Virus record (IMG/VR): IMGVR_UViG_3300034072_000758
Location: 62,001 to 126,000 of that record
Strand: one strand, 5' to 3'
DNA: 64,000 nt
Shown here: piece after piece, positions 14,305-31,723 of the stretch
How the letters are laid out: the number at the start of each line of letters is the position of its first letter
Position numbering within the stretch: position 1 is the first letter of the stretch
The notes under the pieces: model-generated
The model's database searches: none
What the model saw: only the letters and a program-made list of their open reading frames with translations
Told to the model about the DNA's origin: nothing
Made by a program: the position numbers and the translations under genes

Positions 14305-17300
14305 TTATCCAATTGGGTTTGGTTTGTTTCTAGGAACGAAGTTTGCGATATATCTGGCGACCCCGTTGGTAATACGAACGTCATCAATATAACCCCACCA
14401 GTTCCAAGACGCTGGGGTATTTTCATACCCACCGATAGACCAGCTTGTAGAGCGACCACCAATCGGTACTTGCCATACTGCGTTAGTAGATGTGGCTTCG
14501 AGCTTACCGTTCAAGAACATACGGGTTGTACCACCACTTCTTGTCAGCGCAATATGATACCAAGCATTAGGAATCAGCGTCGATGTGCCGATGATTTCAT
14601 TCAGCGTGTTGCCACAAACAAGATTGGAGCCTTTAACACCGAAGAAAATATCGCCACTACCAGCAGGAGAGATATAGTTAGTCAGAACCGCATTATAAGT
14701 TTGGAATGATGTAGCATTGATCCAAGCTTCCATAGTGAAATCACCCGACATAGCAACCGCGTTCTCTACCTTTAAGAATTGGTTGGTTCCAGAAGAAGTA
14801 ATGAAAATAGAATTGCCGAAACCATTATTTGTAACCGCGTTTGATACAACACCAGTTGTCGTGCTACCGTAGTTTCTGGTAATCAGATTACCCTTATTGT
14901 CCACCGGCAACGAACCCACCGCACCGGAGTCCCCATTTACATGAATAACAACGTTGGACCAATATGGGTCGATAGAAGCCGTCACGTTTGCTGTAACGGT
15001 TGTCGTATTGGTCTTAGCTCCGTTGGTTGCGGAAACCGTAAAGGTTCTTGTTGTACCCGGAACATCCGTAGTCACACCCGTCAAGATACCGTTGCTATTC
15101 AGCGTGGTTCCAGTCGGGATTGTTCCGCTTGTTACCGAGTGAATAACAGCATCATTAGACATCATCGAAGCACTTAAATTGTAAGTTTCTGTCGAACTTA
15201 CGTTGCTAGATACTACGATAGAGTTTGTATCAACAAATGACGGTGTTATGTCTAACGTTGGAGCACGATATTGGGTTGGGTTAAACGTTGTGTTATAGCG
15301 AGCCACCCCATTGGAAATACGAATGTCCGCCATGTAGCCCATGAACCCGTGGTTATTATTTAATCTATACGATCCAATACCCCACTCGTTTGTGCTAGAG
15401 CCAACTGTTCCAGTAAAGCTTGTGATTGGGTCAGAACCAACACCATCAACCCAAATACGAGTATTTGAACCTTCGCGGGTAAGAGCAACGTGGTGCCATT
15501 GGTTAAACGACATACCGCCAGCAGCAGTATAGATACGGACGCCACCGTTAGTAAAGATCACAGCGCGGGCCGAAGATGAACCCGATGGCGCATAAATGGA
15601 CATCGCCCAATTTTGAACAGCCACCGATCCGCCGACCGGATAACAAGCAAATATAATAGAGTTAGCTGTTGCTGCTACGCCTGTCGGATATACCCAAGCT
15701 TCCATAGTGAAATCACCCGACATTTGTACAATATTTCCAACAAACAAACCACGTCCGTTTCCAGAACCAGTGGAGTTTTGGAAATAAACAACATTTCCAT
15801 TATACAGCGAGTTCATATTCGACACGACCGCTGATCCGTTGCTTACTACTTCTTGTAAAACGGTTGAGCCTCTAGCGACTTCGATTGGAACAGTAGCATT
15901 AGCAGTATTCAGTCCTGTTATCAAAGCAGTAACATTAGCCCAATGTGGGTCAACGCTGTTTCTGATTTCAAATGTCACCGGACTGGATGTTACCACCGAG
16001 GCATTTGGTGCGTTGGTATACTTAGCATTTACAGTTCCAGTAAAGGTTCCAGCAACCGCATTTGCTTTCCCACCAACGACGCCATTAGATGTCATAGTTA
16101 TGCCATCTGGCAACACTGCCGAATTGGTCATACTATAAACAATGTTCTCACCATAAGATTGTGCGGAAAGAGTTGTATATGTCGGGTAAATATTAGACAA
16201 GTAAACTCTTGGCTGCGCTCCCCATGTTGGCGAAGCATCCTGACGTGGGTAGCTGGTTGTAGGTATACTCATTGTGGTGGAAGGATAACGATTTACCCCG
16301 TTGGTTACACGAACATCATAGATATACCCGTTGAAGCATTCGTTAGAATACGCCATACCACCGATGCCAGAGAACGTAATTGTTCCAGCCAATGTAGCCT
16401 GTGCTACGCGATTACCGTTCAAGAACATGCTCAATGTTGTGCCAGTTCTCGTGATAGCAAAATGATGCCATGTATTTACCGCAACCGTACCTGTACCGGA
16501 GGACATTATAAATGCTCCGTTATTATACATGTAGAGACCTCTTGGACCCGACGCATCATCACGAACACCAATGGTATAATCAGTGCCGGTAGCGGTTGCG
16601 GTAGTTCTATTACCCAATATAGTAGACCACGCCGCCAGTGTGGTTGGATAGAACCAAGCTTCCATAGTGAAATCACCAGTCATAGCGGTTGTATTACCAA
16701 CCAGATATGAGTTGGTCGCACTAGAGAATACCATAGTGTTCGAACCAAAGCGCTGAACCGTATTTGAGTTTACACCGACAGTTGTGCTGGCGGCTGTTTG
16801 TGTCAGACTATTCGCAGTCTTAACGTTCTTAGCAATTGATCCCACCACCGCATTTGAGTAAGTTAGATTTGTCACGTTAGCCCAGAATGGGTCATATGTG
16901 GAAACAGCGGTAAAGGTAAATGTACGATCTTGAGTAACAAAACCATTACCACCCGAAGCAGTGATGGTTGTATTCGTCACGCCAGTCGATACCGGTTGAC
17001 CGCTGATCATACCATTAGCCGCGACCGTCATACCACTAGGCAAAGCGGAACCATTCGCAATAGAATATGTTACCACACCGTTGGCTTTTGTATCAGCCAA
17101 CAACCCAATTTGGTTATCACCAGCGGTTGTTACATATTGATCAGCAGCCGTTATCCATCTAAGTGTAGTTTGTTCGGTCGGGAATGCCTTAGATGGGACT
17201 GCGAAGTTTTCACGATAGCGCGCGACTCCATTGGTCATACGGAACTCGTCAACATAGCCGATCCAACCCCAATCTGCCCCGTCGAATACAGAACCACCAA

Positions 17301-20300
17301 TAGTCCAAGCTGTTACGGTTGAACCTATCACGCCTGTCAATACAGCACTTGATCCAATCAGGCTACCATTCAACCACAGCTTCAAAATACCACTTTCTCT
17401 AGTTACGGCAATATGATGCCATGTATTGAGTGGCATAGAGTTGGCGGCACCAATAAATTGGTATCCCGAATTAAAATAGAGGAACAAAGCGTTTGAGCTA
17501 TGGATACCTAATACAAATTCGTTTGGCGAAGAGGCTGCTGAACCTGAACGGATCGATAACAAGTTACTTGATGTGCTATATACACCCGTTGGATAAACCC
17601 ATGTTTCAATCGTGAAATCACCAGACATTGTGGTGATATTACCGATGTTCAGATAATTGCTGGTTGTTGTCAAAGAAGTCAACAAAGACTTACCACCGAA
17701 TTTGGTTACCGCATTGGATACACAACCTGTTGTGGAAGATACAACACGTTGAGTAATAACCGCCGAGTTCTTGATGTCGGCTGGCGCAGTACCAATAGTC
17801 TGATCCATATTCATCAGAATAGTTACGTTAGACCACAATGGATCGGCGTCCGATTGAACAATCGAAACAGACTTAGATGAAGCTCTACCATAGCTATCTG
17901 TCATGGTTACGACCGCATTACTTGTTACTGTGGATGTATTTCCAATTCTACCCAGAGTACCAGTAATGACGCCATTAGAATTTATAACAAGACCGTTAGC
18001 TAGAGAACCACTTGTAACTCCAAAAGTTACAGGCAGATTAGTTCTGTTTACAACCCCCAAATCTTTGAAGAATACCATATCACTGGTGGTATAAGTAGTA
18101 ACGACATTCGTGGTCATTACCGGAGTAATAAATGAAGTGTCATTTTCTACAGTCGGAGCCGTAAAGTTAGCGGTATAGCGAGCTACGCCATTAGTAAAGC
18201 GAACATCATCAAAGTATAAACTTGCTGATGGGTTGCTCATAGCATCGGTACGGAAGGAACCAACCGCCCAATATGTGCTTGGGGAAATTGCGCCCGATGT
18301 CCAACCATTCTTGGTCAATTCAAGTACACCGTTAACGTAAACCTTAAATACGCCACTTTGTCTCACCAAAGCGATGTGCGACCAAGCATTCAAGTTAACT
18401 TTCGATACCCCAGCACCAAAGTTTTGAGTAAAGGAGTTGCTGTTGTCGTTACCATCAAGGTTTACGATACCAGTTTGACCAATCCACACGTACATTTTGT
18501 TAGCTACGTTAGACCCGGTTCTATTAGAGAAAACAGCAGTACCGGAGGATGGGAGAGTGGTTGGATAAACCCAAGTTTCAAGCGTGAAATCACCAACCAG
18601 ATCAGCAACGTTCGAAATTCTCAGAGCATTTGTTGAGTTCACGAACAATGATCCAGTTCCGAACTTAGATTGCGACGACGACACCGAAGCATTACTTGTG
18701 CTTGTAATAAATTGTGAAACAGGAAGACCGTTAGACAGTTCGTTTGGAACGTTAGCGGTGGCATATTCTGTATTCATATTCATCAATACAATGACATTAC
18801 TTCCGTATATATCCGAAGCGGTAACACCAAAACGGAAATCCTTATCAGAAAACTTAGTAGTAACAGTATCGGTCACACGGGTTGTGAAATTGAAGGTAGA
18901 TGTCGTATTTTCATTAATCTGACCAGAGAGCAAACCGGTGTTCGAAAGGGTCAACCCATTAGGAATAGAACCATTTGCCAAAGCATAACTCAGTGGGTTT
19001 GAAACTGGCGAAGTCGCTAACAATTGTGAATTTACCAACGCACCATTAATTCCTGAGAAGGTATTGGATGTGTTGGCCCAAACCGGGGCCGATGATAGGA
19101 TCGAGTAAACAACGTTAGTGACCGCCGAACTCATACCATCCGATCCCGTAACCGTGGCATTACTTACAGTCGTATATTCTGGGAGTCTACCAGAGATCAA
19201 ACCATTAGCCGAAAGTGCGAGGTTCGCGCTCAAACCATTAGCAGAATAAGTCAGAGAAGTGTTACCCCAACCATAACCAACCACGGTTTGAGAAACGTTA
19301 GCATACTCATAACCAGACAGCGTAACCGTCGCGTTCATCAACGGAGCTTTGAAGTTATTCCACGATGGTGTGAAATTAGCTGTATAACGGGTGTATCCAA
19401 CCCAAGTCATCATACCACGCATGTAACAAATCTTCGATTGTGTTGCTTGGTTATAACTTTGTGAAGCACCATTGAACGCTAAGAGACGACCTTCCCAGCT
19501 TGGATATGTCGCTTGCGCCGTAGAAGTTCCAACCAGAGTGCCACCAATAAACAAACTGAAAGTATTATTCGCATTTCTGGTGAGAGCAACGTGCGTCCAT
19601 TGATCTAATGGAATGATGCTATTTACAGTTATACAAACAGTACCAAAGTATGAGAAGGTAATAGTGTTATTGGTGTAATTCTGAATTATGTTCATTCTTT
19701 CACCAAGCGTCCCTGATCCGCCGCCACTAGATTGTTGGCTGAACAGATACCAAGAACCGGTTGTTGGCGAAGTCGGATCAAGCTTAACCCAGAACTCCAA
19801 AGTCGATGGACTTGTATATAAGAAGTTCGAAGAAGCTTCGTATGCGATACCTTGATTCAATCTCAAGACATTATTACCCATTTGTGGGTCGGCAACGATT
19901 GTTGCGCCAGATGCTACACCAACACCCCAAGCGGTAAACGTATCACTAATGCTCGTTGGTCGTGAAGGGCGCGAGCCGTTTTCTGCCAGAACATTAGACG
20001 ATCTGTTGTAACGATGATGTATATACAAATTCGATGCGTATGGCGTTGGAACAGTCTTAGCCGTTGGTGTAATCACGAAAGTACGATCACGAGATTTGTT
20101 GGCCAAACCATCCATTGAATAAACAGTCAAGCTCGTATTTTCGATATTTTCCAAATATCGTCCAGATACTAAACCATTTGAAGCCAGTGCTACGTTTGAA
20201 CCCAAAGTCGAGTTCGCAATATAAAGCATGGTTCCGGTGTTGTTAGAATCAACTGCCACCAGATTGTAGGTGAAAGTATTATCTTCCGTGCCGGTAAGAA

Positions 20301-23300
20301 TTGTTCCAGCAGGGGTAGTCCAATACGGAATTGTTGGAACTTCGTCAGTTGGAAGTGTGAACGCAGGAGTCGTGTAACGGGCTGCATTGGTCATACGGAG
20401 ATCGTCAATATATCCAACAACACCCGAAGCGCTGTCACCCATCACGAACGCCGAATTAATAGCGGTTCTAGTGATGAAGTATGTACCAATACGGTATCCG
20501 TCAACGTATGCCGAAACATTCGATCCTTGGATCACATAAGCAATGTGTGTCCAGTCACTAATAGCATTCGACGTAGCGAATACGGTGGAACCACCTGCGC
20601 CGAGATAATGAGAAATGAACTCCAATTGACCATCCGAGTTAACGCGCAGGGCAACATAATCGGTGTCGGTCGCGGTCTTCTTCGAGAAGATATAACCGTA
20701 GTTACCCGAAGACGGTAAATTAGAAACTTTCACCCAGCCATCAATGGTGTACCCAACGGTATTTGCCGTATTTGCGAGATTGAGATTATAGTTCGCATCA
20801 TACGCAACCGAAGCATACGAAGTCGTAGTAGGCAGCGAAAGTGAACCCGCGCCGAACTGAACTTCACTTGTTGCCAGAGAAGCAGAGCCACCGGCTGTAA
20901 TCGCTGTACCGAAGAAGTCCAGAGCGATAGTGTCATTGAATTGAGCCAAGAACACAACTTGTTGCGAATAAACGTCTGTCTTATCAGCACTCGGAAGAAC
21001 AGTCATGGTGAAAGTTCTGTCCGCGAAGTTACCATCTTCGTCCGTTACACGAACATCGATAGAAGGCGTCAACAGTGTTTCAATGTTTACCGGAATACCA
21101 GAAATCAGACCCGAAGAAGAAAGGGTGAGAGCGGCTGGAAGTGTTGTGCCATTAACTAGAGCGTAAGTGAGTACATCATTATCTGCATCTGTAGCCGACA
21201 ACTGAACCGAAACGTTTGCGCTGTCTTGGAATGTCCCAATGTCGCCAGCGGGAGTGACCCACACCGGTCCTACGTTCTTCTTAACATCCAAGCTGAATGA
21301 TCTGGTAGACTTGTAACGACCATCCGATGCGTCTACATCGAATGTATAAACCGTGTCTACTGATACATCTGGTAACGCACCAATCAAGTAACCGTTAGCC
21401 AAGAGACCCAACGAGGATGGGAATGGGTTGTTAACAATGTTAGCCGAGTAAGCAACTGAGCTACCTTGGAGGTCTGTTGCCGACAAATGATAGGAGAATG
21501 GCTTGTTCTCTGTGCCTGTACCGATGATGCCCGCGTTCGTATTCCATACCGGAGCGCTATCATATCGGTTCAAGAAGGTGAAGGTTCTGTTGACTTGGAT
21601 CGAGCCATCGAAAGCACCAACTGACAACGAGTAGGTGGTATTAGCACCAACAACCGGCATAGTTCCAGAGATCACCCCGGTGTTAGGGTTAAACGTGATG
21701 CTTGATGGGAAACTATTGCTCATTTCCACGAGTGTCAGAGCATCACCATCCGGGTCAGTAGCAGAGATTGTTGCCGTGAATGGATAATCCATTAATGATG
21801 ATACCAGAAGACCCGCTGGTTGATTCCATACAGGTGCTCTATTCAGAGCGATAGTATAAGAGAACTCGCGGTCGGTATACTTGGTAGTGAGAGTATCTGT
21901 GGCGCGGGCTGAGAAATTGTAGGTAGTATCTTGGGTAATAACTGGTGTAGTACCAGTGATCAAACCATTAGCATTCAATGTCAAGCCTACAGGTAAAGCC
22001 CCGTTAGCTATAGTATATTCAATAGGATCACCATTGGCCACAGCCGTTAACTGAATAGATACTGATTTTTCTTGGCCCTCTGTTCCGAGACTACCGGCTG
22101 GGGTTACCCAAGACGGTGCTGAGTTAAACAGTGTCGTACCACGAAGGAGAACCGAATTGGTGTTGACCGAAAACTCACCCGGCTGATCCTTGACTGAAAC
22201 GTAGAACGAGTAGTCAGTATCTTCCAGAACTGGCAACAGTGTACCGGTAATCAAACCAGAGGTCGAAATAGACAACCCGGCTGGCAGTGTCCCATAGAAA
22301 TAAACACTATCTTCCGACTCTGGATCATAAGCATCCACTTGATATGAAACTGAACGGCCTTCGAAATCATTAAAGACTACAGTGTTAGCAACCGTATTGA
22401 ATACAGCCGGTTCATTTTTTAATACTGTAAAGTAGAAAGCTTTATCTTCATACGTATTACCATCTGACGCTCGGAATGTGACGTGATAATCGGTGTCTTC
22501 ATCCAATGGCGGTGACTTCGGTAATGTGCTTTGTGGGATGGTTTCAACAGTTTTTGAACCCGGTAGAATACGCATCCACCCCGGAATATCCGTAGAAATT
22601 ACAGAGTAGGTCATGGTCGAGTCGGGATCGTAAGCTGTTGGTGTAAACGAACCCGGATAACCTGAACGGAACGAACCCATATAAGCGTTTGATGTCCATA
22701 CAGGAGAAACGTTGTGCTTTACTTCAAAATCGAAAGTTTTTTGAACAGTCTCAAAACCGTCCGTAACCGATGCTACAAGCGTATAAACGTTCGATGTAGG
22801 TTCAGCGCCCAATGTACCGGAAACAAGGCGTGTAGCTGGGTTAAAAGTAATACCTGCCGGGAATGTGTTAGATATTTCGGCGTAGGTAAGCGTATCCAAA
22901 TCAAGGTCCGTGGCCGCAGGAATTACATAATTAATTGTGGTGTTTTCTTGATACGAACCCAAAGAGTTTGAAACGTTCCAAACTGGACCGGTGTTCTTGA
23001 TGAACGATACTTCGAACTCACGCATGATAGGCGGATTGACTTCATCCGATACCGTTACGTTGAAATAATAAGTAGCATTGGATTCGGATGGGGCAAACTG
23101 GCCGGAAATGATACCATTCGCCAAAGTGATAGTATTCGGTAAGTTCGTGTCAATTGTATCGAACTTGAGGACGGACTCTTCATTATCATCCGCAACTAAC
23201 TGTACAGAGAATGGGTGATTAGCGCGATACGCACCTATGCTGCCAGCCGGAATGATCCAGTATGGTGGTGTATTCTCTTCAACTTCAATGCTAAATTGAC

Positions 23301-25581
23301 GTGTAGAAGACTTAATACCATTATATGCTTCAACCGTGAACAGTTCGGTTCCAAATACGGTAGGTGTGCCATGAATTAGACCATTACCTTCCATAACCAA
23401 ACCAGTTGGGAGTTCACCCGAAACAACCGAGTACGCGATGTTTCCTGTGTTAGTACCAGTAGCAACAATCTGAGCGGTGTATGGTTTATCTACCAGAACG
23501 CTAGGTAGCGTAGTAGTGACGAATACTGGCGGCGAGTCATACTTAGATTCGATGGTAAAATCACGATAGACCGGTATCGGGTTGTCCTTATTATCCATCG
23601 CGGTCAAACGGAAAGAATATACGTAATCGTCCGTCCCCGGAACTGGTGGGAGATAACCTGTCAGAGCACCGGTGTTAGCATTCAAAGAAATACCAACCGG
23701 AAGGCTAAAGGATTGAGCAACGCCGTAACGCACAGTGTCACCATCTGGGTCTGTGGCCGAAACATTAGCGGTGAAGTATGTTTGTTCAACGCCCTGTCCG
23801 AGGCTTCCAGCAGGAGTTTGCCATTCAGGTAGATTGTTACCAAGGATGGTCATAGAGAACGTTCTGTTCACATTATTGACGCCATCCGAAGCACGGAATG
23901 TGACCGTGTATGTGGTATCATCTTCAATATGCGAAGGTGTGCCGCTAATACGAATACCAGATGGTTCATAAGCATAAACCAGACCCGGAACCAGATCACC
24001 AGATACATATGCGTATGTCATTGGGCGGTTGTTTGGGTCAGTCGCCGTCAGATTAATATCAGTGATGGCATTCGAGGCAGGGAAGGAACCAAGAGAACCC
24101 GCGTTGGAAACCCAAACTGGCGGAATATCGTCAAGAACTGTGAAATTGAAAAGTTTAGAAATCGATCCGGCTGGATTCGATGCTGTTACGGTAAAGTTAT
24201 ATACCAAATCACTTATGACCGGCAAAGCCGTACCTGTCATCAAACCAGTCGAAGACAAACTAAAACCGTCTGGCATATCATCGGATGAATAAGTAATCGA
24301 ATCGCTCGGATTAGCGGTGTCCGCAACAAACTGGAACGAGAACTCGGTGCCTTCCAGAGCGGAACCAATATTTGAGTTGGAAATCCAAGTTGGCACATCA
24401 ACGAATTGAATACGGATCGCCAATGTACGGGTCGCAACTAATCCGCTCTCGTCGGTAGCTGTAAAGGTTACGTTCTGAGTGCTGGTCGATGTCACTGGCG
24501 GGAGTGTGCCAGTGATCAAGCCGGAAGATGACAAAGAAAGACCTTCTGGCAGAGGCGTCGTGTTACCAAAGGTTACTGTCTCATACTCGTCTGTGGCGAC
24601 CAACTGGAAATTAACCGAAGTACCAGCATCGGCGTCGATGATACGACCTGTTGTAACCCATACCGGAGGAATATTCTTCACGGTGGTCATGGAGAATGTA
24701 GCCGAACGCGACTTCAAGCCATCCGAAGCTGTAACTTGGAAGCTATAGTTGTCGTTGTAGTTTTTGTTCAGAGCCAGTGTACCACTCAGGTGGCCATTAT
24801 CGAAGACCAATTCTGGTGGCAGAACGCCGGACGTGTGGGTAAAAGTAATCGTATCACCATTACCATCAGTAGCCTCGATATTGAGGTCAACCACCGCATT
24901 TTCTTGGTAACGACCCAAGTAGCTATCTGTTGTGAATACCGGAGCTTTGTTCGATGTTACCGAGAAGTTGAAGGATCGGTTGACCGACAGAGCGCCATCG
25001 GTGGCACGAAGAGTGAAAAAGTAGGTGAAATCATCATTCACGGGAGCCAGACGCCCCGACAGAAGACCGGTATTCGAAAGCGTCAGACCAGCAGGAAGAG
25101 TACCTGTTACTAAAGAGAAACGAACTGTTTCACCATCCGGGTCGGTGGCGACCAGTTGGACACTTACGTCAGTGCCGTCATATTGCATTCCGAGGCTACC
25201 GGCTGGGGTAACCCAAATCGGGGCTTGGTTTGCGCCAAGGTGGGCCGAGAAGCTTCTTTCGACAAATTGCTGACCACTTTCAGCACGGATCGTCCACACA
25301 GCATCTTCGGTGACGTTATCGATAGTACCGGTCATGGCTCCGGTATTAGCATTGATCGAAAGACCTGTTGGGAGAGCACCGGAAACCACCGAGAAAGATG
25401 GTGCTGGACCATTAGTGACACGAACGTAAACTGGAATATCCACGACTTGTCCACCAAGGAAGTTACCAATATCACCAGCGGGCGGAGCGATCCACTCTAT
25501 CGATGGTGCGGAAGTATTGTAATTCTTTGTGTGAACGATCTTTTTAATATGACCATCGTATTTGATACCCATGAGTGTCAA
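14305..25581 (-). CDS. Giant virion fibre/adhesin (3,758 aa; probable start 25572): tandem Ig-like repeats plus 7 LamG/ConA-like domains
   Basis: Repeated P-x-W-x-T-x-A-G-x-L-G / SG-x-LP-x-GL-x-L-x-x-x-G-x-I-x-G units, and seven (D)FT-x-E-x-W...W-x-H-x-A...D-x-R-x-T-x-G-V-A-R-Y modules. ATAAATA at 25605-25611 (-). Confidence 0.85.
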   Translation of the reverse strand: MTLMGIKYDGHIKKIVHTKNYNTSAPSIEWIAPPAGDIGNFLGGQVVDIPVYVRVTNGPAPSFSVVSGALPTGLSINANTGAMTGTIDNVTEDAVWTIRAESGQQFVERSFSAHLGANQAPIWVTPAGSLGMQYDGTDVSVQLVATDPDGETVRFSLVTGTLPAGLTLSNTGLLSGRLAPVNDDFTYFFTLRATDGALSVNRSFNFSVTSNKAPVFTTDSYLGRYQENAVVDLNIEATDGNGDTITFTHTSGVLPPELVFDNGHLSGTLALNKNYNDNYSFQVTASDGLKSRSATFSMTTVKNIPPVWVTTGRIIDADAGTSVNFQLVATDEYETVTFGNTTPLPEGLSLSSSGLITGTLPPVTSTSTQNVTFTATDESGLVATRTLAIRIQFVDVPTWISNSNIGSALEGTEFSFQFVADTANPSDSITYSSDDMPDGFSLSSTGLMTGTALPVISDLVYNFTVTASNPAGSISKLFNFTVLDDIPPVWVSNAGSLGSFPASNAITDINLTATDPNNRPMTYAYVSGDLVPGLVYAYEPSGIRISGTPSHIEDDTTYTVTFRASDGVNNVNRTFSMTILGNNLPEWQTPAGSLGQGVEQTYFTANVSATDPDGDTVRYGVAQSFSLPVGISLNANTGALTGYLPPVPGTDDYVYSFRLTAMDNKDNPIPVYRDFTIESKYDSPPVFVTTTLPSVLVDKPYTAQIVATGTNTGNIAYSVVSGELPTGLVMEGNGLIHGTPTVFGTELFTVEAYNGIKSSTRQFSIEVEENTPPYWIIPAGSIGAYRANHPFSVQLVADDNEESVLKFDTIDTNLPNTITLANGIISGQFAPSESNATYYFNVTVSDEVNPPIMREFEVSFIKNTGPVWNVSNSLGSYQENTTINYVIPAATDLDLDTLTYAEISNTFPAGITFNPATRLVSGTLGAEPTSNVYTLVASVTDGFETVQKTFDFEVKHNVSPVWTSNAYMGSFRSGYPGSFTPTAYDPDSTMTYSVISTDIPGWMRILPGSKTVETIPQSTLPKSPPLDEDTDYHVTFRASDGNTYEDKAFYFTVLKNEPAVFNTVANTVVFNDFEGRSVSYQVDAYDPESEDSVYFYGTLPAGLSISTSGLITGTLLPVLEDTDYSFYVSVKDQPGEFSVNTNSVLLRGTTLFNSAPSWVTPAGSLGTEGQEKSVSIQLTAVANGDPIEYTIANGALPVGLTLNANGLITGTTPVITQDTTYNFSARATDTLTTKYTDREFSYTIALNRAPVWNQPAGLLVSSLMDYPFTATISATDPDGDALTLVEMSNSFPSSITFNPNTGVISGTMPVVGANTTYSLSVGAFDGSIQVNRTFTFLNRYDSAPVWNTNAGIIGTGTENKPFSYHLSATDLQGSSVAYSANIVNNPFPSSLGLLANGYLIGALPDVSVDTVYTFDVDASDGRYKSTRSFSLDVKKNVGPVWVTPAGDIGTFQDSANVSVQLSATDADNDVLTYALVNGTTLPAALTLSSSGLISGIPVNIETLLTPSIDVRVTDEDGNFADRTFTMTVLPSADKTDVYSQQVVFLAQFNDTIALDFFGTAITAGGSASLATSEVQFGAGSLSLPTTTSYASVAYDANYNLNLANTANTVGYTIDGWVKVSNLPSSGNYGYIFSKKTATDTDYVALRVNSDGQLEFISHYLGAGGSTVFATSNAISDWTHIAYVIQGSNVSAYVDGYRIGTYFITRTAINSAFVMGDSASGVVGYIDDLRMTNAARYTTPAFTLPTDEVPTIPYWTTPAGTILTGTEDNTFTYNLVAVDSNNTGTMLYIANSTLGSNVALASNGLVSGRYLENIENTSLTVYSMDGLANKSRDRTFVITPTAKTVPTPYASNLYIHHRYNRSSNVLAENGSRPSRPTSISDTFTAWGVGVASGATIVADPQMGNNVLRLNQGIAYEASSNFLYTSPSTLEFWVKLDPTSPTTGSWYLFSQQSSGGGSGTLGERMNIIQNYTNNTITFSYFGTVCITVNSIIPLDQWTHVALTRNANNTFSLFIGGTLVGTSTAQATYPSWEGRLLAFNGASQSYNQATQSKICYMRGMMTWVGYTRYTANFTPSWNNFKAPLMNATVTLSGYEYANVSQTVVGYGWGNTSLTYSANGLSANLALSANGLISGRLPEYTTVSNATVTGSDGMSSAVTNVVYSILSSAPVWANTSNTFSGINGALVNSQLLATSPVSNPLSYALANGSIPNGLTLSNTGLLSGQINENTTSTFNFTTRVTDTVTTKFSDKDFRFGVTASDIYGSNVIVLMNMNTEYATANVPNELSNGLPVSQFITSTSNASVSSSQSKFGTGSLFVNSTNALRISNVADLVGDFTLETWVYPTTLPSSGTAVFSNRTGSNVANKMYVWIGQTGIVNLDGNDNSNSFTQNFGAGVSKVNLNAWSHIALVRQSGVFKVYVNGVLELTKNGWTSGAISPSTYWAVGSFRTDAMSNPSASLYFDDVRFTNGVARYTANFTAPTVENDTSFITPVMTTNVVTTYTTSDMVFFKDLGVVNRTNLPVTFGVTSGSLANGLVINSNGVITGTLGRIGNTSTVTSNAVVTMTDSYGRASSKSVSIVQSDADPLWSNVTILMNMDQTIGTAPADIKNSAVITQRVVSSTTGCVSNAVTKFGGKSLLTSLTTTSNYLNIGNITTMSGDFTIETWVYPTGVYSTSSNLLSIRSGSAASSPNEFVLGIHSSNALFLYFNSGYQFIGAANSMPLNTWHHIAVTRESGILKLWLNGSLIGSSAVLTGVIGSTVTAWTIGGSVFDGADWGWIGYVDEFRMTNGVARYRENFAVPSKAFPTEQTTLRWITAADQYVTTAGDNQIGLLADTKANGVVTYSIANGSALPSGMTVAANGMISGQPVSTGVTNTTITASGGNGFVTQDRTFTFTAVSTYDPFWANVTNLTYSNAVVGSIAKNVKTANSLTQTAASTTVGVNSNTVQRFGSNTMVFSSATNSYLVGNTTAMTGDFTMEAWFYPTTLAAWSTILGNRTTATATGTDYTIGVRDDASGPRGLYMYNNGAFIMSSGTGTVAVNTWHHFAITRTGTTLSMFLNGNRVAQATLAGTITFSGIGGMAYSNECFNGYIYDVRVTNGVNRYPSTTMSIPTTSYPRQDASPTWGAQPRVYLSNIYPTYTTLSAQSYGENIVYSMTNSAVLPDGITMTSNGVVGGKANAVAGTFTGTVNAKYTNAPNASVVTSSPVTFEIRNSVDPHWANVTALITGLNTANATVPIEVARGSTVLQEVVSNGSAVVSNMNSLYNGNVVYFQNSTGSGNGRGLFVGNIVQMSGDFTMEAWVYPTGVAATANSIIFACYPVGGSVAVQNWAMSIYAPSGSSSARAVIFTNGGVRIYTAAGGMSFNQWHHVALTREGSNTRIWVDGVGSDPITSFTGTVGSSTNEWGIGSYRLNNNHGFMGYMADIRISNGVARYNTTFNPTQYRAPTLDITPSFVDTNSIVVSSNVSSTETYNLSASMMSNDAVIHSVTSGTIPTGTTLNSNGILTGVTTDVPGTTRTFTVSATNGAKTNTTTVTANVTASIDPYWSNVVIHVNGDSGAVGSLPVDNKGNLITRNYGSTTTGVVSNAVTNNGFGNSIFITSSGTNQFLKVENAVAMSGDFTMEAWINATSFQTYNAVLTNYISPAGSGDIFFGVKGSNLVCGNTLNEIIGTSTLIPNAWYHIALTRSGGTTRMFLNGKLEATSTNAVWQVPIGGRSTSWSIGGYENTPASWNWWGYIDDVRITNGVARYIANFVPRNKPNPIG

Positions 25582-26530: not shown

Positions 26531-26992
26531 TTAAGCCGCTGCGGTTTCGGTCTTGGCCTTGCGCGAAACTTGGCGACCGCCTTGGCCGAGGCCCATTTGC
26601 TTGGCCAGTTCCGAACGGGCCTTGGCGTAAGCCGGGGCGACCATCGGGTAGTCGGCGGGCAGACCCCACTTGGCGCGATATTCGTCCGGCGTCATGCCGA
26701 GCTTGGCGAGGTGGCGCTTGAGCGACTTGAGCTTGCGACCGTCATCCAGACAGATCAGGAAGTCATTGGTGATCGACTTCTTGACCGAGACGGCGGGTTC
26801 AGCCGGGGTCGAGGGCGTGACGGCGACGGCGGGGGAGATAGCGCTGACGAGAGCTTGGTGAACCGAGGAAATCAGGGCCGGGAGTTCGGCGGACGGCAGG
26901 GTGTTATTACCGACATAGGCAGCGACGATGCGCGAGGCGTGATCGGCGACGGATGCGGTATTCGAGGGAGCGGTTTGGGTTTCGGTAGTCAT
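26531..26992 (-). CDS. mucR: Ros/MucR family transcriptional regulator
   Basis: ASRIVAAYVGNN..., PAVSVKKSITNDFLICLDDGRKLKSLKRHL, MTPDEYRAKWGLPADYPMVAPAYA...RSELAKQMGLGQ is the hallmark MucR sequence; GGAGA RBS. Confidence 0.95.
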   Translation of the reverse strand: MTTETQTAPSNTASVADHASRIVAAYVGNNTLPSAELPALISSVHQALVSAISPAVAVTPSTPAEPAVSVKKSITNDFLICLDDGRKLKSLKRHLAKLGMTPDEYRAKWGLPADYPMVAPAYAKARSELAKQMGLGQGGRQVSRKAKTETAAA

Positions 26993-27122: not shown

Positions 27123-27476
27123 TCAAAAAAATTTCGATTTTCTTAGATCACTTACCAAAATCCCTTGAACCGAAAAGGTTTCTTCAAACAAAACTACGTC
27201 TTCCAATGTCTCAAATAGCAAGAAAACGTCCTTTTTGTTAGGGTCAAATGGCATGATTTCAGGATAGGTACTGTAGGGCCATTCGTTCCCCATATACCAT
27301 TTTCCTTCGGTCGTATCGAATAACCAGTCGGTTACTTCTTTCTGGAAGTTAACCATGTCTATACCACGAACACAATCACCTTGGATTCGGTAGCAATAAT
27401 GCTCCGCTTCAAATCCGTAGTAATTAATGATCGGTGACATGAAATTTTTATCTCCAAAGATTCGTATCAGAATCAA
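27123..27476 (-). CDS. Hypothetical protein
   Basis: 117-aa ORF with a family-like FLLFETLEDVVLF motif. Confidence 0.5.
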   Translation of the reverse strand: MILIRIFGDKNFMSPIINYYGFEAEHYCYRIQGDCVRGIDMVNFQKEVTDWLFDTTEGKWYMGNEWPYSTYPEIMPFDPNKKDVFLLFETLEDVVLFEETFSVQGILVSDLRKSKFF

Positions 27477-27580
27477 ATACTACCACTGAATATAAAAAAA
27501 GTATAGTCATTTGAGTCAATTAAAATTGACTCTCGTAAAAATGATTCATTACACTGTCGCTTAATGGCCTCTAAATAGAA

Positions 27581-28258
27581 GTCATTCGGTAACTCGTGAT
27601 GGAGTTGCTGGCATAGTGATCAGATGTATACTAGCCTCTAACATCAGGCTAAAACGGCGTCCGGGGAACATGACCCGGCCTATGAGACAGGTCAGTCGAA
27701 CGGAAATGAATAGTCAGGAACGCTCCCCCGCCTGATAAAAGTTAAACCGCATATCCTTTCAAGGGATATGAAACCGTCTAAAAGGAATCCTACAAAACCT
27801 TGAAAATTAGGAATGTAGGTGTCACCTTCCACATGTATAACGCATTGTGGGAGTGGCGCTGACGCCGCGAAAGCGGTAGTCTAACCGATGTCTGATTACA
27901 AATATCATTATGAGATATTCGGCCTGTTTGATCCGCGAGGAACCTACAGGAGTGTGGCGAATAAACTAAGGGATCGATGATCCTAGTCAATGTTCTATGC
28001 CCCGTATCTCCCCTTTAACCGGCCAAATTAGGGCGTGGCACAATGTATGTAATTATGGGATGACCGTAGAGAGGGTAAGGAATACGCATCCGCCTTACCA
28101 TGTTCGGAAACATCAATCCGAACTTCGCGGCTCGTTATCAATGTGGAAATATTGCTTCATCCCCCGTGAGATAATTTTTTACTACGCCCATAGTGTAATG
28201 GGGTAAAAATATTTGTCTCGCGGGGGGAGATAAAGCTTCTATGGTAATACGGAATGAA
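27581..28258 (+). ncRNA. Candidate large structured ncRNA (~680 nt), family unassigned
   Basis: No convincing ORF. CTAAATA late motif at 27571-27577. 5' TCATTCGGTA (27582-27591) pairs with 3' TACGGAATGA (28248-28257) at 9 of 10 positions. Many internal hairpins. Confidence 0.6.
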
Positions 28259-28263
28259 TTATG

Positions 28264-28905
28264 TCATTCGTCATTATCGTGTTCATATAGAATAATGTCT
28301 TTTAGTATTGTGTTTTTCATATCAGCAAATACTTCGTCATCGCTTCCATATCCATCCCATATATCTGTTAATAATGAGTATAGTTCTCTGGCTATTGGGC
28401 TTTTTGGTGATCTCTGTAAAAAATACTTAAGTCCATTCATAGACCACAATATATTCCTTTCTGGTATTTCTACGGCATAAACAATAATTATACTTTTCAA
28501 GTCCTCTAATAGTGTTGAGCCATCATGAATGAAGTCATTTACGTCATGTACCATGTAGTGTAATTGACCTCTAATAAAATTATGAACATTATCTATGTCT
28601 GTTGTGAAACCTTGAAGACCAGTCATATCAAATCGAGAATGTTCTTTTAAATGCTTATATAATTCCGATACCGTCTGATAATTATTTTTATCTTCATCGG
28701 TGATCTCGTGAAATATCCCACGATAGTAGATACTATGGCCTTTTGTCTCTTCATATCCATGATCTCTAATTACTCTGGCTACATCATTCATATCGCCTTC
28801 GTAATTATTATCCCTTATATAATGAACCAAAATTTCTAGGGCCTCATCCAAAGACATACCAGTATGTTCTTTTAAAAGAACCTTATATTTTTTAAACCAA
28901 TCCAT
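28264..28905 (-). CDS. Putative ADP-ribosyltransferase-fold protein (R-S-E type)
   Basis: IYYRGI...QGFTTDID...YAVEIP...SDDEVF spacing resembles the ART R/STS/ExE motifs. TATAAATA at 28911-28918 (-). Confidence 0.5.
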   Translation of the reverse strand: MDWFKKYKVLLKEHTGMSLDEALEILVHYIRDNNYEGDMNDVARVIRDHGYEETKGHSIYYRGIFHEITDEDKNNYQTVSELYKHLKEHSRFDMTGLQGFTTDIDNVHNFIRGQLHYMVHDVNDFIHDGSTLLEDLKSIIIVYAVEIPERNILWSMNGLKYFLQRSPKSPIARELYSLLTDIWDGYGSDDEVFADMKNTILKDIILYEHDNDE

Positions 28906-28986
28906 AATTTTATTTATAAAAAGCCTCGGTGAAAGTGGGGGACTATCATGCTAATATTCTAGTGATCAGATCACATAAATATGGGT

Positions 28987-29565
28987 ATGCGTTATTTTGA
29001 GTTATTCGAATCCGAACTCCCTATGGATCAAGAGTCTCGTATGGCTAGAGCCAAGCAGATGGGATTCAACACGAGAGCTTATCATGGAACTAATTCTGAC
29101 ATAGACGAGTTCTCTCTTGATAAAACCAAAACCAATATCATGACAGGTCATGGTTTCCATTTCGCGGATAACTCTAAAGAAGCAAGTGGATATGCCAAGC
29201 AGCTTAAAGGCGCAGGGCGCAATGTTCTTCCTGTCTTACTGAGAATCAGAAAAGCATTTGTCGTAGGTATAGACGCACAGAATTACGATAATTATAAATG
29301 GATAAACAATACCTATGAGGAATTGGGTAAATCTGCTAATTTATCGGGAAGCATCTGGGATCAGAACAATCAGAAGATCATTTGGAAAATGGTTTACGAT
29401 AAGCTAGAGGGGATGGGGTACGATTGCATTTATTGGGAGAAAACCCCCGCCGATTTTATGAAGGGGCATTATAATAAGATCGTTATGTTCAACCCAAAAA
29501 ATATTCGTTCGATTTTTGCTAAGTTCGACCCATCTAAGAGTAATTCCGCGAATATCAATGATTAA
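28987..29565 (+). CDS. ART-PolyVal-like ADP-ribosyltransferase domain protein
   Basis: MDQESRMARAKQMGF, AYHGT, GHGFHFADNSKEASGY, NVLPVLL, IVMFNPKNIRSIFAKFDP. ATAAATA at 28975-28981, so the start is moved to the second ATG. Confidence 0.75.
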   Translation: MRYFELFESELPMDQESRMARAKQMGFNTRAYHGTNSDIDEFSLDKTKTNIMTGHGFHFADNSKEASGYAKQLKGAGRNVLPVLLRIRKAFVVGIDAQNYDNYKWINNTYEELGKSANLSGSIWDQNNQKIIWKMVYDKLEGMGYDCIYWEKTPADFMKGHYNKIVMFNPKNIRSIFAKFDPSKSNSANIND

Positions 29566-30168: not shown

Positions 30169-30666
30169 ATGAAAGTTCTGGTTTTAGACATCGAAGGGGA
30201 TGGGCTGTATCCGTCCGAAATCCATATGCTAGGCGTATTGGATTATGTCACCGATGAATTTACCAACTATAATGGTGACGCAATAGCAGATGGTCTTTGT
30301 GAAATAGATGAATGCGATATTCTGCTGGTTTACAATAAAGACTACGACATTAAGCACATAAAACGTCTGACTGAAAATGTTGTCTCGTTCAAAGAAGTTG
30401 TCATTATTGACGTTCTTGAACTCAGCCGCAAATATGTAAAATTTTTACCTAATAACAAGTTAAAGACTTGGGGTGATTATTTTGATTTTCCTAAAGGTGA
30501 TCATAATGACTGGTCAAAATACTCTCCCGAAATGGGAGTATATTGCGAGCGTGATTGTAGATTAACCAAAAAAGTATTTGACTTCATTTGCGAAATGCTG
30601 CTACCGTCCAAAGACATTTTGTTAGAGGCAATTGAAGATGCTCAGAGAAAACGCCAAATTCTATGA
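30169..30666 (+). CDS. Stand-alone DEDDy 3'-5' exonuclease (PolA/T7 gp5 proofreading-domain-like)
   Basis: LVLDIEGDGL, VYNKDYDI, IIDVLELSR, LKTWG, YCERDCRLT. Confidence 0.75.
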   Translation: MKVLVLDIEGDGLYPSEIHMLGVLDYVTDEFTNYNGDAIADGLCEIDECDILLVYNKDYDIKHIKRLTENVVSFKEVVIIDVLELSRKYVKFLPNNKLKTWGDYFDFPKGDHNDWSKYSPEMGVYCERDCRLTKKVFDFICEMLLPSKDILLEAIEDAQRKRQIL

Positions 30667-31723
30667 TTACGATGATGTGTTGATTCTTCCAAAGAAATCA
30701 AGTTTCACGTCACGTAAAGATGCTGTCGTTACCCGAAAGTTTAAAACAAAACATTCGGGTGTTACTTTCTCCGGTGTCCCAATCATCGCCGCAAATATGG
30801 ACACGACTGGCACTCTTGGGATTGCCGCCGCGCTCCAAAAAGAAAAAATGTTCACGGCACTCCACAAATATTACACCGCAGACGAAATTATCAATGCTGC
30901 TACCAAGGGTGTATCTTGGAGTTTCGATGAAGGTTATCATGGCGACAAGCTCAACAAAGACTACATTTTCTTATCCATCGGCTTTTCCGAGGACGAGTTC
31001 GATAAGATCGAAAAGGTTCAACAAACCTTGGGTTATCATCCGCACATTTGCGTCGATGTTGCCAATGGTTATACCGAAGCATATATCGAGTTCCTGACCA
31101 AGGTTCGTGAGAAGTTTTATAACTCGGTCATTATGGCTGGGAACGTTGCTACCCCCGATATTATCCCAGATTATGATGCGGCTGGGGTTGACATTATTAA
31201 GATCGGCATCGGGCCGGGAAACTTCTGTCGCACCCGCACGACTGCTGGGGTCGGTGTACCTCAATTGACAGCGGTTATGGAAACCGCCGCCAAAGCCGAT
31301 CTTCATGGGATCATGATCTGTGCTGATGGTGGGGTAAACGAATATTGCGACTTTGCTAAAGCACTGATTGGTGGTGCTGATATGGTCATGGCTGGAAGCA
31401 TGTTCGCCGCGCATGATGAGTCTGGTGGTGATGTGATTGAAGAAAATGGCGTCCGCAAAGTGCTGACATACGGAATGTCATCCGAACACGCCATGAAGAA
31501 GTACGCCGGGGAAGTGAATGCTTATCGCGCGTCCGAGGGTCGTACTGTCGCGGTTCCCCACAAAGGCCCTGTAGCCAACACAGTGCGGAACATCTTGGGT
31601 AGCTTGAGAAGCACTATGACTTACACCAACAGCCACAAAATAACTGATCTTCCACAAGCCGAAATGATCGTTGTTAATCGCACGATCAATAAGGCGCATG
31701 TCCAGAACACGGTTGGAATCTAA
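30632..31723 (+). CDS. guaC: GMP reductase (probable start ATG 30640)
   Basis: YDDVLILPK, PIIAANMDT, ICVDVANGY, MAGNVAT, KIGIGPG..C.TR, CADGG, YGMSS, YRASEGRTV. Confidence 0.92.
   Translation: MKMLRENAKFYDYDDVLILPKKSSFTSRKDAVVTRKFKTKHSGVTFSGVPIIAANMDTTGTLGIAAALQKEKMFTALHKYYTADEIINAATKGVSWSFDEGYHGDKLNKDYIFLSIGFSEDEFDKIEKVQQTLGYHPHICVDVANGYTEAYIEFLTKVREKFYNSVIMAGNVATPDIIPDYDAAGVDIIKIGIGPGNFCRTRTTAGVGVPQLTAVMETAAKADLHGIMICADGGVNEYCDFAKALIGGADMVMAGSMFAAHDESGGDVIEENGVRKVLTYGMSSEHAMKKYAGEVNAYRASEGRTVAVPHKGPVANTVRNILGSLRSTMTYTNSHKITDLPQAEMIVVNRTINKAHVQNTVGI

What the first reader, a model, noticed from the sequence alone, without database searches (positions are those of the whole stretch)
27571..28260. 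Unannotated ~680-nt structured late RNA
Seen: an ~790-bp gap without a credible ORF in a genome that is otherwise wall-to-wall genes. The late motif CTAAATA (27571-27577) sits 3 nt before a segment whose 5' end (TCATTCGGTA) pairs with its 3' end (TACGGAATGA), closing the whole region. Internal hairpins include CATATCCT/AGGGATATG (27750-27770), CCGC-GAAA-GCGG (27865-27876), AATATC/GATATT, CCTACA/TGTAGG, CCTGT/ACAGG, GGTAAGG/CCTTACC (28074-28099), TTCGGA/TCCGAA (28103-28122) and TTTTTAC..CCCA/TGGGGTAAAAA. A TTGACT-N18-TACACT promoter-like site also lies at 27526-27555. Established: large phage ncRNAs of this size class exist (GOLLD, ROOL). Inference: a member of such a class or a new one, possibly virion-associated given the late promoter.
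Basis: partly seen in the sequence, partly recalled or inferred. Interest (0 to 1): 0.78.

Follow-up and report, generated by a model that had tools for sequence, protein, structure and literature searches.

The report
New large structured phage RNA family
The gene-free gap encodes a roughly 690-nt, intricately folded non-coding RNA with its own promoter, one of four diverged copies in a 517-kb jumbo phage, and it matches no known RNA family, so it looks like a new class of large phage RNA whose function is unknown.

Summary
The gap (27477-28263) is real and non-coding. It holds an RNA gene at about 27562-28249 (+).

The 516,805-bp phage genome carries four diverged paralogues, A to D, of about 580-690 nt. 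All four share:
- a TTGACT-N18-TAnnnT promoter;
- a 5' three-way junction with a pseudoknot;
- a row of hairpins;
- a clamped 3' domain.

At least 16 helices keep their position while their sequences differ. In the 5' domain 94% of cells pair, 7 pairs change on both sides, and 0 of 500 shuffles reach this. Substitutions show no codon periodicity.

No homologue turned up in Rfam 15, GenBank phages, or the pattern scans of IMG/VR, JGI metagenomes and GTDB. Model searches of 25 relatives, Atu_ph07 and Phosso also found none.

- "late": CTAAATA is not enriched;
- "virion-associated": no evidence;
- the 5'/3' closing helix: not conserved;
- GOLLD/ROOL membership: not met.

Two leads are unresolved. 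In copy B, and in a relative's version of copy A, the RNA abuts an ART-PolyVal ADP-ribosyltransferase gene. The four copies are also evenly spaced and tend to sit at strand and GC-skew switches, which suggests origin RNAs. There are no expression data.

The parts
27526..27555 (+). Sigma-70-type promoter: -35 TTGACT (27526-27531), 18-nt spacer holding GATTCA, -10 TACACT (27550-27555). The predicted start is about 27562.
   Evidence: The same TTGACT-N18-TAnnnT precedes copies B, C and D. Promoter use itself is inferred.
27562..28249 (+). RNA gene, copy A, about 688 nt from the predicted start to the end of the last conserved helix strand.
   Evidence: Fold z = -8.0. Four paralogues. Homology with the relative in run X7 ends at 28249. 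No codon signal.
27562..27588 (+). 5' leader found only in copy A. It contains CTAAATA and an AAUAGAAG stretch complementary to 28235-28242.
   Evidence: Absent from B, C and D. The pairing appears in the fold.
27589..27608 (+). H1 hairpin (GUAACUC/GAGUUGC).
   Evidence: A hairpin sits at the same place in all four copies with unrelated sequences.
27617..27694 (+). 5' core domain. H2 closes a three-way junction (27617-27621 with 27690-27694). It encloses pseudoknot PK1 (27623-27627 with 27641-27645), H3 (27632-27636 with 27647-27651) and H4 (27661-27666 with 27674-27678, loop AACAUGA).
   Evidence: 94% of cells paired, 7 pairs with changes on both sides, 0 of 500 shuffles as high, and slid controls at 23-47% paired.
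27695..27703 (+). Conserved joining segment GUCGAACGG. Its CGG can pair with the CCG just 5' of H6; copy D has AGG/CCU.
27714..27876 (+). Row of five hairpins: H5 27714-27735, H6 27750-27770, H7 27789-27819, H8 27825-27853, H9 27865-27876.
   Evidence: All five recur in B, C and D at homologous positions with different sequences.
27837..27842 (+). Apical loop of H8 (AUAACG), complementary to 28133-28138 (CGUUAU). This is the candidate long-range pseudoknot PK2.
   Evidence: (repeat I2). The pairing is kept in all four copies with double-sided changes at both ends. It cannot form at the same time as P-alpha.
27882..27894 (+). Conserved motif UAACCGAUGUCUG. In the whole genome it occurs only in the four copies.
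27895..28073 (+).
   Evidence: The alignment among copies is uncertain here.
28074..28123 (+). H11 (GGUAAGG/CCUUACC, loop holding the conserved AUCCGC) and H12 (GUUCGGA/UCCGAAC).
28133..28249 (+). 3' domain. It holds the GUUAY segment (28133-28138), P-beta (28143-28148 with 28237-28242), the long P-gamma stem (28160-28171 with 28216-28228), the conserved GGGGGGAGAUAAAG (28222-28235) and the 3' strand GGUAAUA (28243-28249; candidate P-alpha).
   Evidence: P-gamma keeps 11-12 paired positions with unrelated sequences in B, C and D.
28250..28272 (+). Short AU-rich hairpin just after the RNA, with no U-tract.
   Evidence: an analogous hairpin follows all four copies. The terminator scan found none on this strand.
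28264..28905 (-). 213-aa ORF of unknown function, convergent with the RNA. It is absent from the relative in run X7.
   Evidence: joint 28249 to 28970. No Pfam or PHROG family.
28981..29565 (+). ART-PolyVal ADP-ribosyltransferase gene (194 aa). In the X7 relative it starts 33 nt after the RNA's 3' end.
   Evidence: (PF18760, E = 5.6e-17).

Best explanation
Window 27562-28249 (+) is a free-standing gene for a non-coding RNA of about 690 nt. It is one of four diverged paralogues in a 517-kb jumbo phage of the Atu_ph07 and Phosso kind.

Shown:
- Each copy has the same sigma-70-type promoter.
- All copies keep one fold while their sequences diverge. The fold has a 5' hairpin, a three-way junction with an H-type pseudoknot, five hairpins in a row, a variable middle, and a 3' domain of nested helices ending at the last conserved base.

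Inferred:
- Host RNA polymerase transcribes the RNA early.
- It acts in trans through its folded shape, as a scaffold or assembly that binds protein or RNA. That is the same kind of thing as the ornate phage RNAs ROOL and GOLLD. It is not a messenger leader, an intron or a riboswitch.
- The diverged peripheral hairpins give the four copies different partners. ART-PolyVal effectors are the best candidates for those partners.
For: Non-coding:
- The gap holds only ORFs of 69 aa or less.
- Each reading frame of each copy has at least 7 stops.
- 14 of 17 indels between B and C are not multiples of 3, and mismatches show no period of 3.

Present as a family and on this strand:
- Four copies were found by BLAST, nhmmer and covariance model. 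Copy D scored E = 3.7e-5 in a whole-genome search.
- Fold z is -8.0 on the + strand and -4.4 on the minus strand.
- Many G.U pairs work only on the transcribed strand.

Structure:
- Covariation is strong in the 5' domain.
- At least 16 helices are kept with different sequences.

Free-standing gene:
- The promoter is conserved in all four copies.
- The flanking genes are on the opposite strand at A. The downstream gene is convergent at D and probably at C, where the calls overlap.

New family:
- No Rfam family matches.

Precedent:
- ROOL and GOLLD are large phage-encoded RNAs that act as RNA-only assemblies (PMC12286853).
Against: - There is no transcript evidence. No RNA run holds the region, so the start, the end and the timing are all predicted.
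- There is no recognisable terminator.
- Covariation rests on only four paralogues from one genome. The one relative could not be retrieved as sequence.
- In copy B, and in the relative's version of A, the RNA ends about 30 nt before an ART gene. That fits a co-transcribed leader or partner as well as it fits a trans-acting RNA.
- The even spacing and the skew switches point to a DNA-replication role.
- The central alignment, and the choice between P-alpha and PK2, are unresolved.
Confidence: 0.6

Rival explanations
1. The RNA is the first part of a two-gene module with an ART-PolyVal ADP-ribosyltransferase. It is co-transcribed upstream of the enzyme gene and serves as its regulator, antidote, substrate or cofactor. 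The layout resembles a type III toxin-antitoxin operon, or the RNA could be one that an ART attaches to proteins, as T4 ModB does. Copies C and D would have lost or never gained the enzyme gene.
For: - Copy B ends about 30 nt before a 312-aa ART gene on the same strand.
- In the X7 relative, copy A ends 33 nt before the ART start, too short a gap for a separate promoter.
- Three of the genome's seven ART genes lie within 2 kb of A or B, and those three are each other's closest paralogues.
- A short hairpin sits between the RNA and the ART gene.
- An A is available at each predicted start, as NAD capping needs (sequence).
- RNAylation by a phage ART is established (PMC10468400).
Against: - Copies C and D have no ART gene within several kb, and their downstream genes appear convergent.
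- In this genome a minus-strand gene separates A from its ART gene.
- The RNA has no tandem repeats of the type III antitoxin kind.
- With seven ART genes, some proximity is expected. The estimate is roughly 4% per copy within 1.5 kb.
Confidence: 0.17
2. The four RNAs are origin transcripts. Like ColE1 RNA II or the R-loop RNAs of T4 oriF and oriG, each folded transcript forms a hybrid with the DNA and primes replication. This would give the 517-kb genome four spaced origins.
For: - The gaps between copies on the circular map are 131, 137, 154 and 95 kb. P(smallest gap this large) = 0.019 and P(largest gap this small) = 0.007.
- C and D sit in the top 1-3% of minus-to-plus GC-skew switches. 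The mean score of the four has P of about 0.007.
- All four lie where gene orientation turns from minus to plus at the 20-kb scale (P = 0.003).
- The size, about 600 nt, is close to RNA II (from memory).
- Copy D lies next to a clamp-loader-like AAA+ gene.
Against: - The tests were chosen after seeing the data, and several window sizes were tried.
- A and B are not at skew switches.
- Skew here follows gene orientation, which is very patchy.
- No antisense promoter of the RNA I kind was found.
- Known phage origin transcripts need no elaborate conserved fold.
Confidence: 0.12
3. It is a catalytic or mobile-element RNA: a new self-processing ribozyme, a degenerate group I or II intron, or the RNA of a retroelement or RNA-guided transposon.
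For: - Multiple diverged copies with a conserved core and variable periphery are typical of introns and mobile RNAs.
- The 3' end lacks a terminator, so processing is possible.
- An EcoRV-like endonuclease gene sits just upstream of copy B.
Against: - No group I, group II, HEARO or small-ribozyme model matches, even at E up to 10.
- The element has its own promoter and is not inserted in a same-strand gene.
- No reverse transcriptase, TnpB, IscB or recombinase gene is adjacent.
- The copies are far too diverged for recent mobility.
Confidence: 0.06
4. It is a diverged member of GOLLD or ROOL.
For: It is phage-encoded, 580-690 nt long and has an ornate fold.
Against: - No match to any Rfam 15 model in any of the four copies, even at E up to 5-10.
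- No tRNA gene lies in the four loci.
- It is shorter than GOLLD.
Confidence: 0.02
5. It is not an RNA at all, but a decayed gene or a DNA-level element such as a protein-binding array.
For: The gap is flanked by low-GC ORFs of unknown function. The palindrome AATTGACTC/GAGTCAATT lies at the promoter.
Against: - Compensatory changes keep the helices.
- Folding and G.U pairs are strand-asymmetric.
- There is no frame or codon signal and there are no tandem repeats.
Confidence: 0.02

Closest known systems
ROOL RNA (rumen-originating, ornate, large)
   Same: - Encoded by phages.
- About 600 nt.
- Many helices and pseudoknots.
- No known protein partner.
- Free-standing gene (PMC12286853).
   Different: - No match to the Rfam model.
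- Not near tRNA genes.
- Four diverged paralogues in one genome.
- Known from one phage lineage only.
- Oligomer formation not tested.
GOLLD RNA
   Same: - A large ornate RNA of phages and prophages.
- One half of the RNA is better conserved than the rest.
   Different: - GOLLD often exceeds 800 nt, its conserved half is the 3' one, and it lies by tRNA genes.
- Here the best-conserved part is the 5' domain.
- There is no model match and no tRNA nearby.
ColE1 RNA II and T4 oriF/oriG origin transcripts
   Same: - A transcript with its own sigma-70-type promoter.
- Size of several hundred nt.
- Position at skew or strand switches for some copies.
   Different: - No antisense RNA I promoter.
- No evidence of an RNA-DNA hybrid or an RNase H site.
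- The comparison rests on memory of those systems, not on a test.
Type III toxin-antitoxin antitoxin RNAs (ToxI)
   Same: In copy B and in the relative of copy A, an RNA gene sits directly upstream of an enzyme gene on the same strand, with a hairpin between them.
   Different: - ToxI is a tandem array of short repeats cut by its toxin. Here there are no repeats.
- The RNA is one large fold.
- The enzyme is an ART, not an RNase.
- Two copies have no enzyme gene.

Membership tests
GOLLD (Rfam) | Match to the family's covariance model at or near its gathering score | tested here: not met
   No match in copy A at E up to 10, nor in copies B, C and D at E up to 5.
GOLLD (Rfam) | Usually beside or around tRNA genes; many members longer than 800 nt (PMC12286853) | tested here: not met
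   ARAGORN finds no tRNA in the four loci. The copies are about 580-690 nt.
ROOL (Rfam) | Match to the family's covariance model | tested here: not met
   no match.
ROOL (Rfam) | Homo-oligomeric RNA-only cage | not testable with these tools
   Needs cryo-EM or native gels of the transcript.
Group I or group II intron | Match to an intron model, and insertion within a gene on the same strand with joinable exons | tested here: not met
   No model match. The element has its own promoter. Flanking ORFs are on the opposite strand at A and convergent downstream at D. EcoRV and ART are complete on either side of B.
Riboswitch or cis-acting leader | Always directly upstream of a regulated gene on the same strand | tested here: not met
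   True for B and for the relative of A. Not true for A in this genome or for D, and doubtful for C, where the downstream calls overlap.
Type III antitoxin RNA | Tandem direct repeats upstream of the toxin gene | tested here: not met
   Tandem Repeats Finder finds no array.
ColE1-type primer RNA (RNA II) | Antisense RNA I promoter inside the 5' region; RNA-DNA hybrid and RNase H cut at the origin | tested here: inconclusive
   The consensus scan finds no minus-strand promoter in 27560-27800. Hybrid formation is not testable here.
New family (this report) | TTGACT-N18-TAnnnT promoter; UGAYCAGAUG...AUGACCC 5' core; UAACCGAYNUCUG; GGGGGAUAAAG-type 3' motif (GGGGGGAGAUAAAG in copy A) | tested here: met
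   All four copies carry all of these. The middle motif occurs nowhere else in the genome.

The most novel reading that the evidence does not exclude
The RNA is the dedicated nucleic-acid partner of ART-PolyVal ADP-ribosyltransferases, forming a two-part RNA-plus-ART module. The large folded RNA would be a substrate joined to host proteins, a guide, or an antidote for the enzyme encoded just downstream. The paralogues would be matched to different enzymes.
Probability: 0.15. Interest if true: 0.85.

Novelty: new variant of a known kind. Interest (0 to 1): 0.72.

Why it matters
Large, intricately folded non-coding RNAs are rare. Each known class (OLE, GOLLD, ROOL, HEARO, raiA) has opened new biology, most recently RNA-only cages.

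This one would be the first such class from the giant rhizobiophage lineage. It is unusual in having four diverged paralogues in one genome.

It comes with two hypotheses that can be tested directly:
- partnership with ADP-ribosyltransferase effectors;
- a role at evenly spaced replication origins in a half-megabase phage genome.

Its weakness is that it is known from one phage and a close relative only, and nothing yet shows that it is expressed.

Tried and rejected
Family and similarity searches that found nothing:
- Rfam at gathering and at permissive E-values on all four copies gave only chance snoRNA or sRNA hits.
- blastn of copies A, B and D against GenBank phages gave no match.
- Exact-pattern scans of IMG/VR gave no true hit. 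The 118 matches to the 14-mer were chance: none of the 118 fetched loci matched the full model significantly, and the best, L008 at 24 bits, owes its score to that 14-mer.
- The JGI metagenome scan gave one chance hit, inside an ORF and with no model match.
- The GTDB genome scan gave five chance hits.

Model searches in relatives:
- Models R1 and R2 were run on 25 contigs related by terminase, plus Atu_ph07 and Phosso. The only weak hits (15-17 bits) lie inside coding sequences.

Searches through neighbouring genes:
- Flanking-protein routes gave no relatives.
- ART homologues lie on contigs too short to help, or share only a C-terminal domain.
- Exact-protein look-ups returned only the source sample.

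Expression:
- No RNA run holds the RNA. The one metatranscriptome covers only the flanks.

Methods that failed:
- MAFFT alignment of the 3' domain was too poor for tool-based pair counts, so those helices were checked by script.
- A structure-aware alignment script left the central region uncertain.

Ideas rejected:
- DGR template repeat. The differences among copies are not adenine-specific, and they are compensatory.
- tRNA-like element.
- Tandem-repeat antitoxin.

Full report
**1. The observation**

The window is bases 62001-126000 of a 516,805-bp IMG/VR virus record. The record's 127-bp terminal overlap marks a circular assembly.

The ORF at 27123-27476 and the ORF at 28264-28905 both lie on the minus strand. 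Between them is a 787-bp stretch with no ORF longer than 69 aa. JGI's own gene calls also leave it empty.

- CTAAATA at 27571-27577;
- TCATTCGGTA at 27582-27591;
- TACGGAATGA at 28248-28257;
- TTGACT-N18-TACACT at 27526-27555;
- the listed hairpins.

The + strand of 27562-28249 folds to -236.6 kcal/mol with z = -8.0. The minus strand gives z = -4.4.

**2. It is one of four paralogues**

BLAST, nhmmer and a covariance model of the 5' part find four copies in the genome:

| Copy | Genome position | Strand | Approx. length |
|---|---|---|---|
| A | 89.6 kb (this window) | + | 688 nt |
| B | 221.4 kb | - | 581 nt |
| D | 358.7 kb | - | 629 nt |
| C | 511.8 kb | + | 615 nt |

A, B and C share about 78% identity over a 5' core of roughly 95 nt. 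Elsewhere they share only short blocks. D is more distant still (34.6 bits, E = 3.7e-5 genome-wide).

The conserved blocks are:
- UGAYCAGAUG;
- GGGGAACAUGACCC;
- AUGAGAC;
- GUCGAACGG;
- UAACCGAYNUCUG, which occurs in the genome only in these four places;
- AUCCGCYU;
- GGGGGAUAAAGAC (GGGGGGAGAUAAAGC in copy A);
- CAUGGUAAUA.

**3. It is RNA, not protein or a DNA element**

- Every frame of every copy has at least 7 stops.
- 14 of 17 indels between B and C are not multiples of three.
- Their mismatches are spread evenly over the three codon positions (P = 0.47).
- There are no tandem repeats.

In the 5' core, four helices (one of them a pseudoknot) were counted on the four sequences:
- 94% of cells are standard pairs;
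- 7 of 22 pairs change on both sides;
- none of 500 shuffles reaches these values;
- sliding the partners by 1-3 columns drops pairing to 23-47%.

A script check shows further helices at homologous places that stay fully paired although their sequences are unrelated. These are H1, H5, H6, H7, H9, H11, H12 and the 11-12-bp inner part of P-gamma. H8 also recurs in all four copies, perfectly paired in B and C and with bulges in A and D.

The apical loop of H8 is complementary to the GUUAY segment of the 3' domain in all four copies, with double-sided changes at both ends:

| Copy | H8 loop | GUUAY segment |
|---|---|---|
| A | AUAACG | CGUUAU |
| B | AUAACAA | UUGUUAU |
| C | AUAGCAA | UUGUUAU |
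| D | GUAACA | UGUUAC |

This is a probable long-range pseudoknot, PK2. It competes with pairing of the same segment to the 3' terminal GGUAAUA (P-alpha). I cannot say which forms, or whether both do in turn.

Many helices contain G.U pairs that would be A.C on the other strand. This agrees with the fold asymmetry and with the direction of the promoter.

**4. Transcription signals**

All four copies are preceded by AAA(A/T)TTGACT, an 18-nt spacer (with GATTCA or GAATCA in three of them), and TA(C/T)(A/C)(A/C)T. The genome has many other TTGACA-type promoters.

Jumbo phages of this kind lack their own RNA polymerase and are thought to retarget the host enzyme with ARTs (PMC7824862). I therefore infer transcription by host polymerase, probably early.

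CTAAATA is not enriched: 5 occurrences against 9.0 expected. It lies in a 27-nt leader that only copy A has. The "late" label has no support.

No intrinsic terminator follows any copy. Each copy is followed at once by a short AU-rich hairpin. The proposed 5'/3' closing helix therefore has a better local alternative. It is also absent from B, C and D, and it lies beyond the point where homology with a relative ends.

**5. Context**

At A the flanking genes are on the opposite strand. At D the downstream gene is convergent, and at C probably so, though the ORF calls there overlap. The RNA is thus a free-standing gene, not an intron or an obligatory leader.

The ART lead:
- Copy B ends about 30 nt before a 312-aa ART-PolyVal gene on the same strand. 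An EcoRV-like endonuclease gene and a second ART gene lie upstream of B.
- A relative about 88% identical is present in public run X7. In it, copy A ends at 28249 and joins, after 22 other letters, to 28970, which is 11 nt before the start of the ART-PolyVal gene at 28981.
- That relative therefore lacks the minus-strand ORF 28264-28905, and its RNA abuts the ART gene.
- The genome has seven ART-PolyVal genes. The three near A and B are each other's closest paralogues.
- C and D have no ART gene nearby.

**6. Position in the genome**

The four copies are unusually evenly spaced on the circular map, with gaps of 131, 137, 154 and 95 kb. P = 0.019 for so large a smallest gap and P = 0.007 for so small a largest gap.

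C and D lie at sharp minus-to-plus GC-skew switches (top 1-3%). A and B do not. All four lie where gene orientation turns from minus to plus at the 20-kb scale (P = 0.003).

These tests were thought of after looking at the data, and gene orientation in this genome is patchy. I treat this as a lead for an origin-transcript role, not as a finding.

**7. Relatives and known families**

The terminase is 52% identical to those of Agrobacterium phage Atu_ph07 (490 kb) and Sinorhizobium phage Phosso (469 kb). A Ros/MucR gene with bacterial-like GC content next to the RNA also points to an alphaproteobacterial host.

No Rfam 15 family matches any copy, and no tRNA is nearby. The following found no true homologue:
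- blastn against GenBank phages;
- pattern scans of IMG/VR, JGI metagenomes and GTDB genomes;
- model searches of 25 related contigs, Atu_ph07 and Phosso.

The family is therefore known only from this phage, near-identical strains in a few runs, and the X7 relative. The large collections could be scanned only with exact patterns, so distant members may have been missed.

**8. Interpretation**

What is shown is a new family of large structured RNA genes. How it works is inferred.

My estimates are:
- about 0.6 that it is a trans-acting folded RNA of the ROOL/GOLLD kind, with the ARTs as the best candidate partners;
- 0.17 that it is a co-transcribed partner or regulator of ART-PolyVal genes;
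- 0.12 that it is an origin transcript;
- 0.06 that it is a ribozyme or the RNA of a mobile element.

GOLLD or ROOL membership, and the decayed-gene reading, are each about 0.02.

No expression data exist for this phage.

Noticed in passing
window 26531-26992 (-): A Ros/MucR regulator gene (PF05443, E = 1.4e-45) has GC of 0.62-0.65 amid flanks of about 0.40. Many unrelated bacterial contigs in public runs match it. It looks like a gene taken from an alphaproteobacterial host, which gives a clue to the host.
   Followed up: partly
window 28264-28905 (-): A 213-aa ORF with no Pfam or PHROG family is missing from the relative in run X7. The breakpoint is exactly the RNA's 3' end (joint 28249 to 28970 with 22 other letters).
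   Followed up: partly
window 28962-28974: The palindrome GTGATCAGATCAC lies 7 nt before the ART start codon. It resembles the RNA's conserved TGATCAGATG.
   Followed up: no
genome 89.6, 221.4, 358.7 and 511.8 kb: The four RNA genes are evenly spaced on the circular map. Two of them, C and D, sit at sharp GC-skew switches.
   Followed up: partly
window 14305-25581 (-): A 3758-aa protein is made of 15 He_PIG Ig-like repeats and 7 LamG-like repeats. It is probably a fibre or whisker adhesin.
   Followed up: partly
window 44280-45629 (+) and six other genome sites: The genome has seven ART-PolyVal paralogues. This one is the N-terminal domain of a 449-aa protein.
   Followed up: partly
L002 1625-2350 (-) = genome 221456-222181: A complete EcoRV-family restriction endonuclease gene (PF09233, E = 2e-50) lies directly upstream of RNA copy B, between two ART genes. 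No methylase was looked for.
   Followed up: no
L002 57-995 (-), residues about 160-312: The C-terminal half of the ART next to copy B recurs in metagenomic proteins whose other part is a cell-wall hydrolase, chitinase or NUDIX domain. It looks like a shared carrier or targeting domain. It has no paralogue in this genome.
   Followed up: partly
window 802 (-), 49528 (+) and at least 6 other genome sites: There is a second, very uniform promoter class, GATAGCTTGACAATATA...TGTGATACTCT. It differs from the RNA genes' promoter.
   Followed up: no
L162 989-3180 (Atu_ph07, record 79548-81739): The large terminase of Atu_ph07 is annotated as two adjacent coding sequences, and the match comes in two pieces.
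   Followed up: no
window 27837-27842, 28133-28138 and 28244-28248: The GUUAY segment can pair either with the H8 loop or with the 3' terminal strand, in all four copies. This could be a folding switch.
   Followed up: partly
window 30632-31723 (+) and 50502-51731 (+): Two nucleotide-metabolism genes are present: an IMPDH/GMP-reductase gene and a nucleoside 2-deoxyribosyltransferase-like gene.
   Followed up: no
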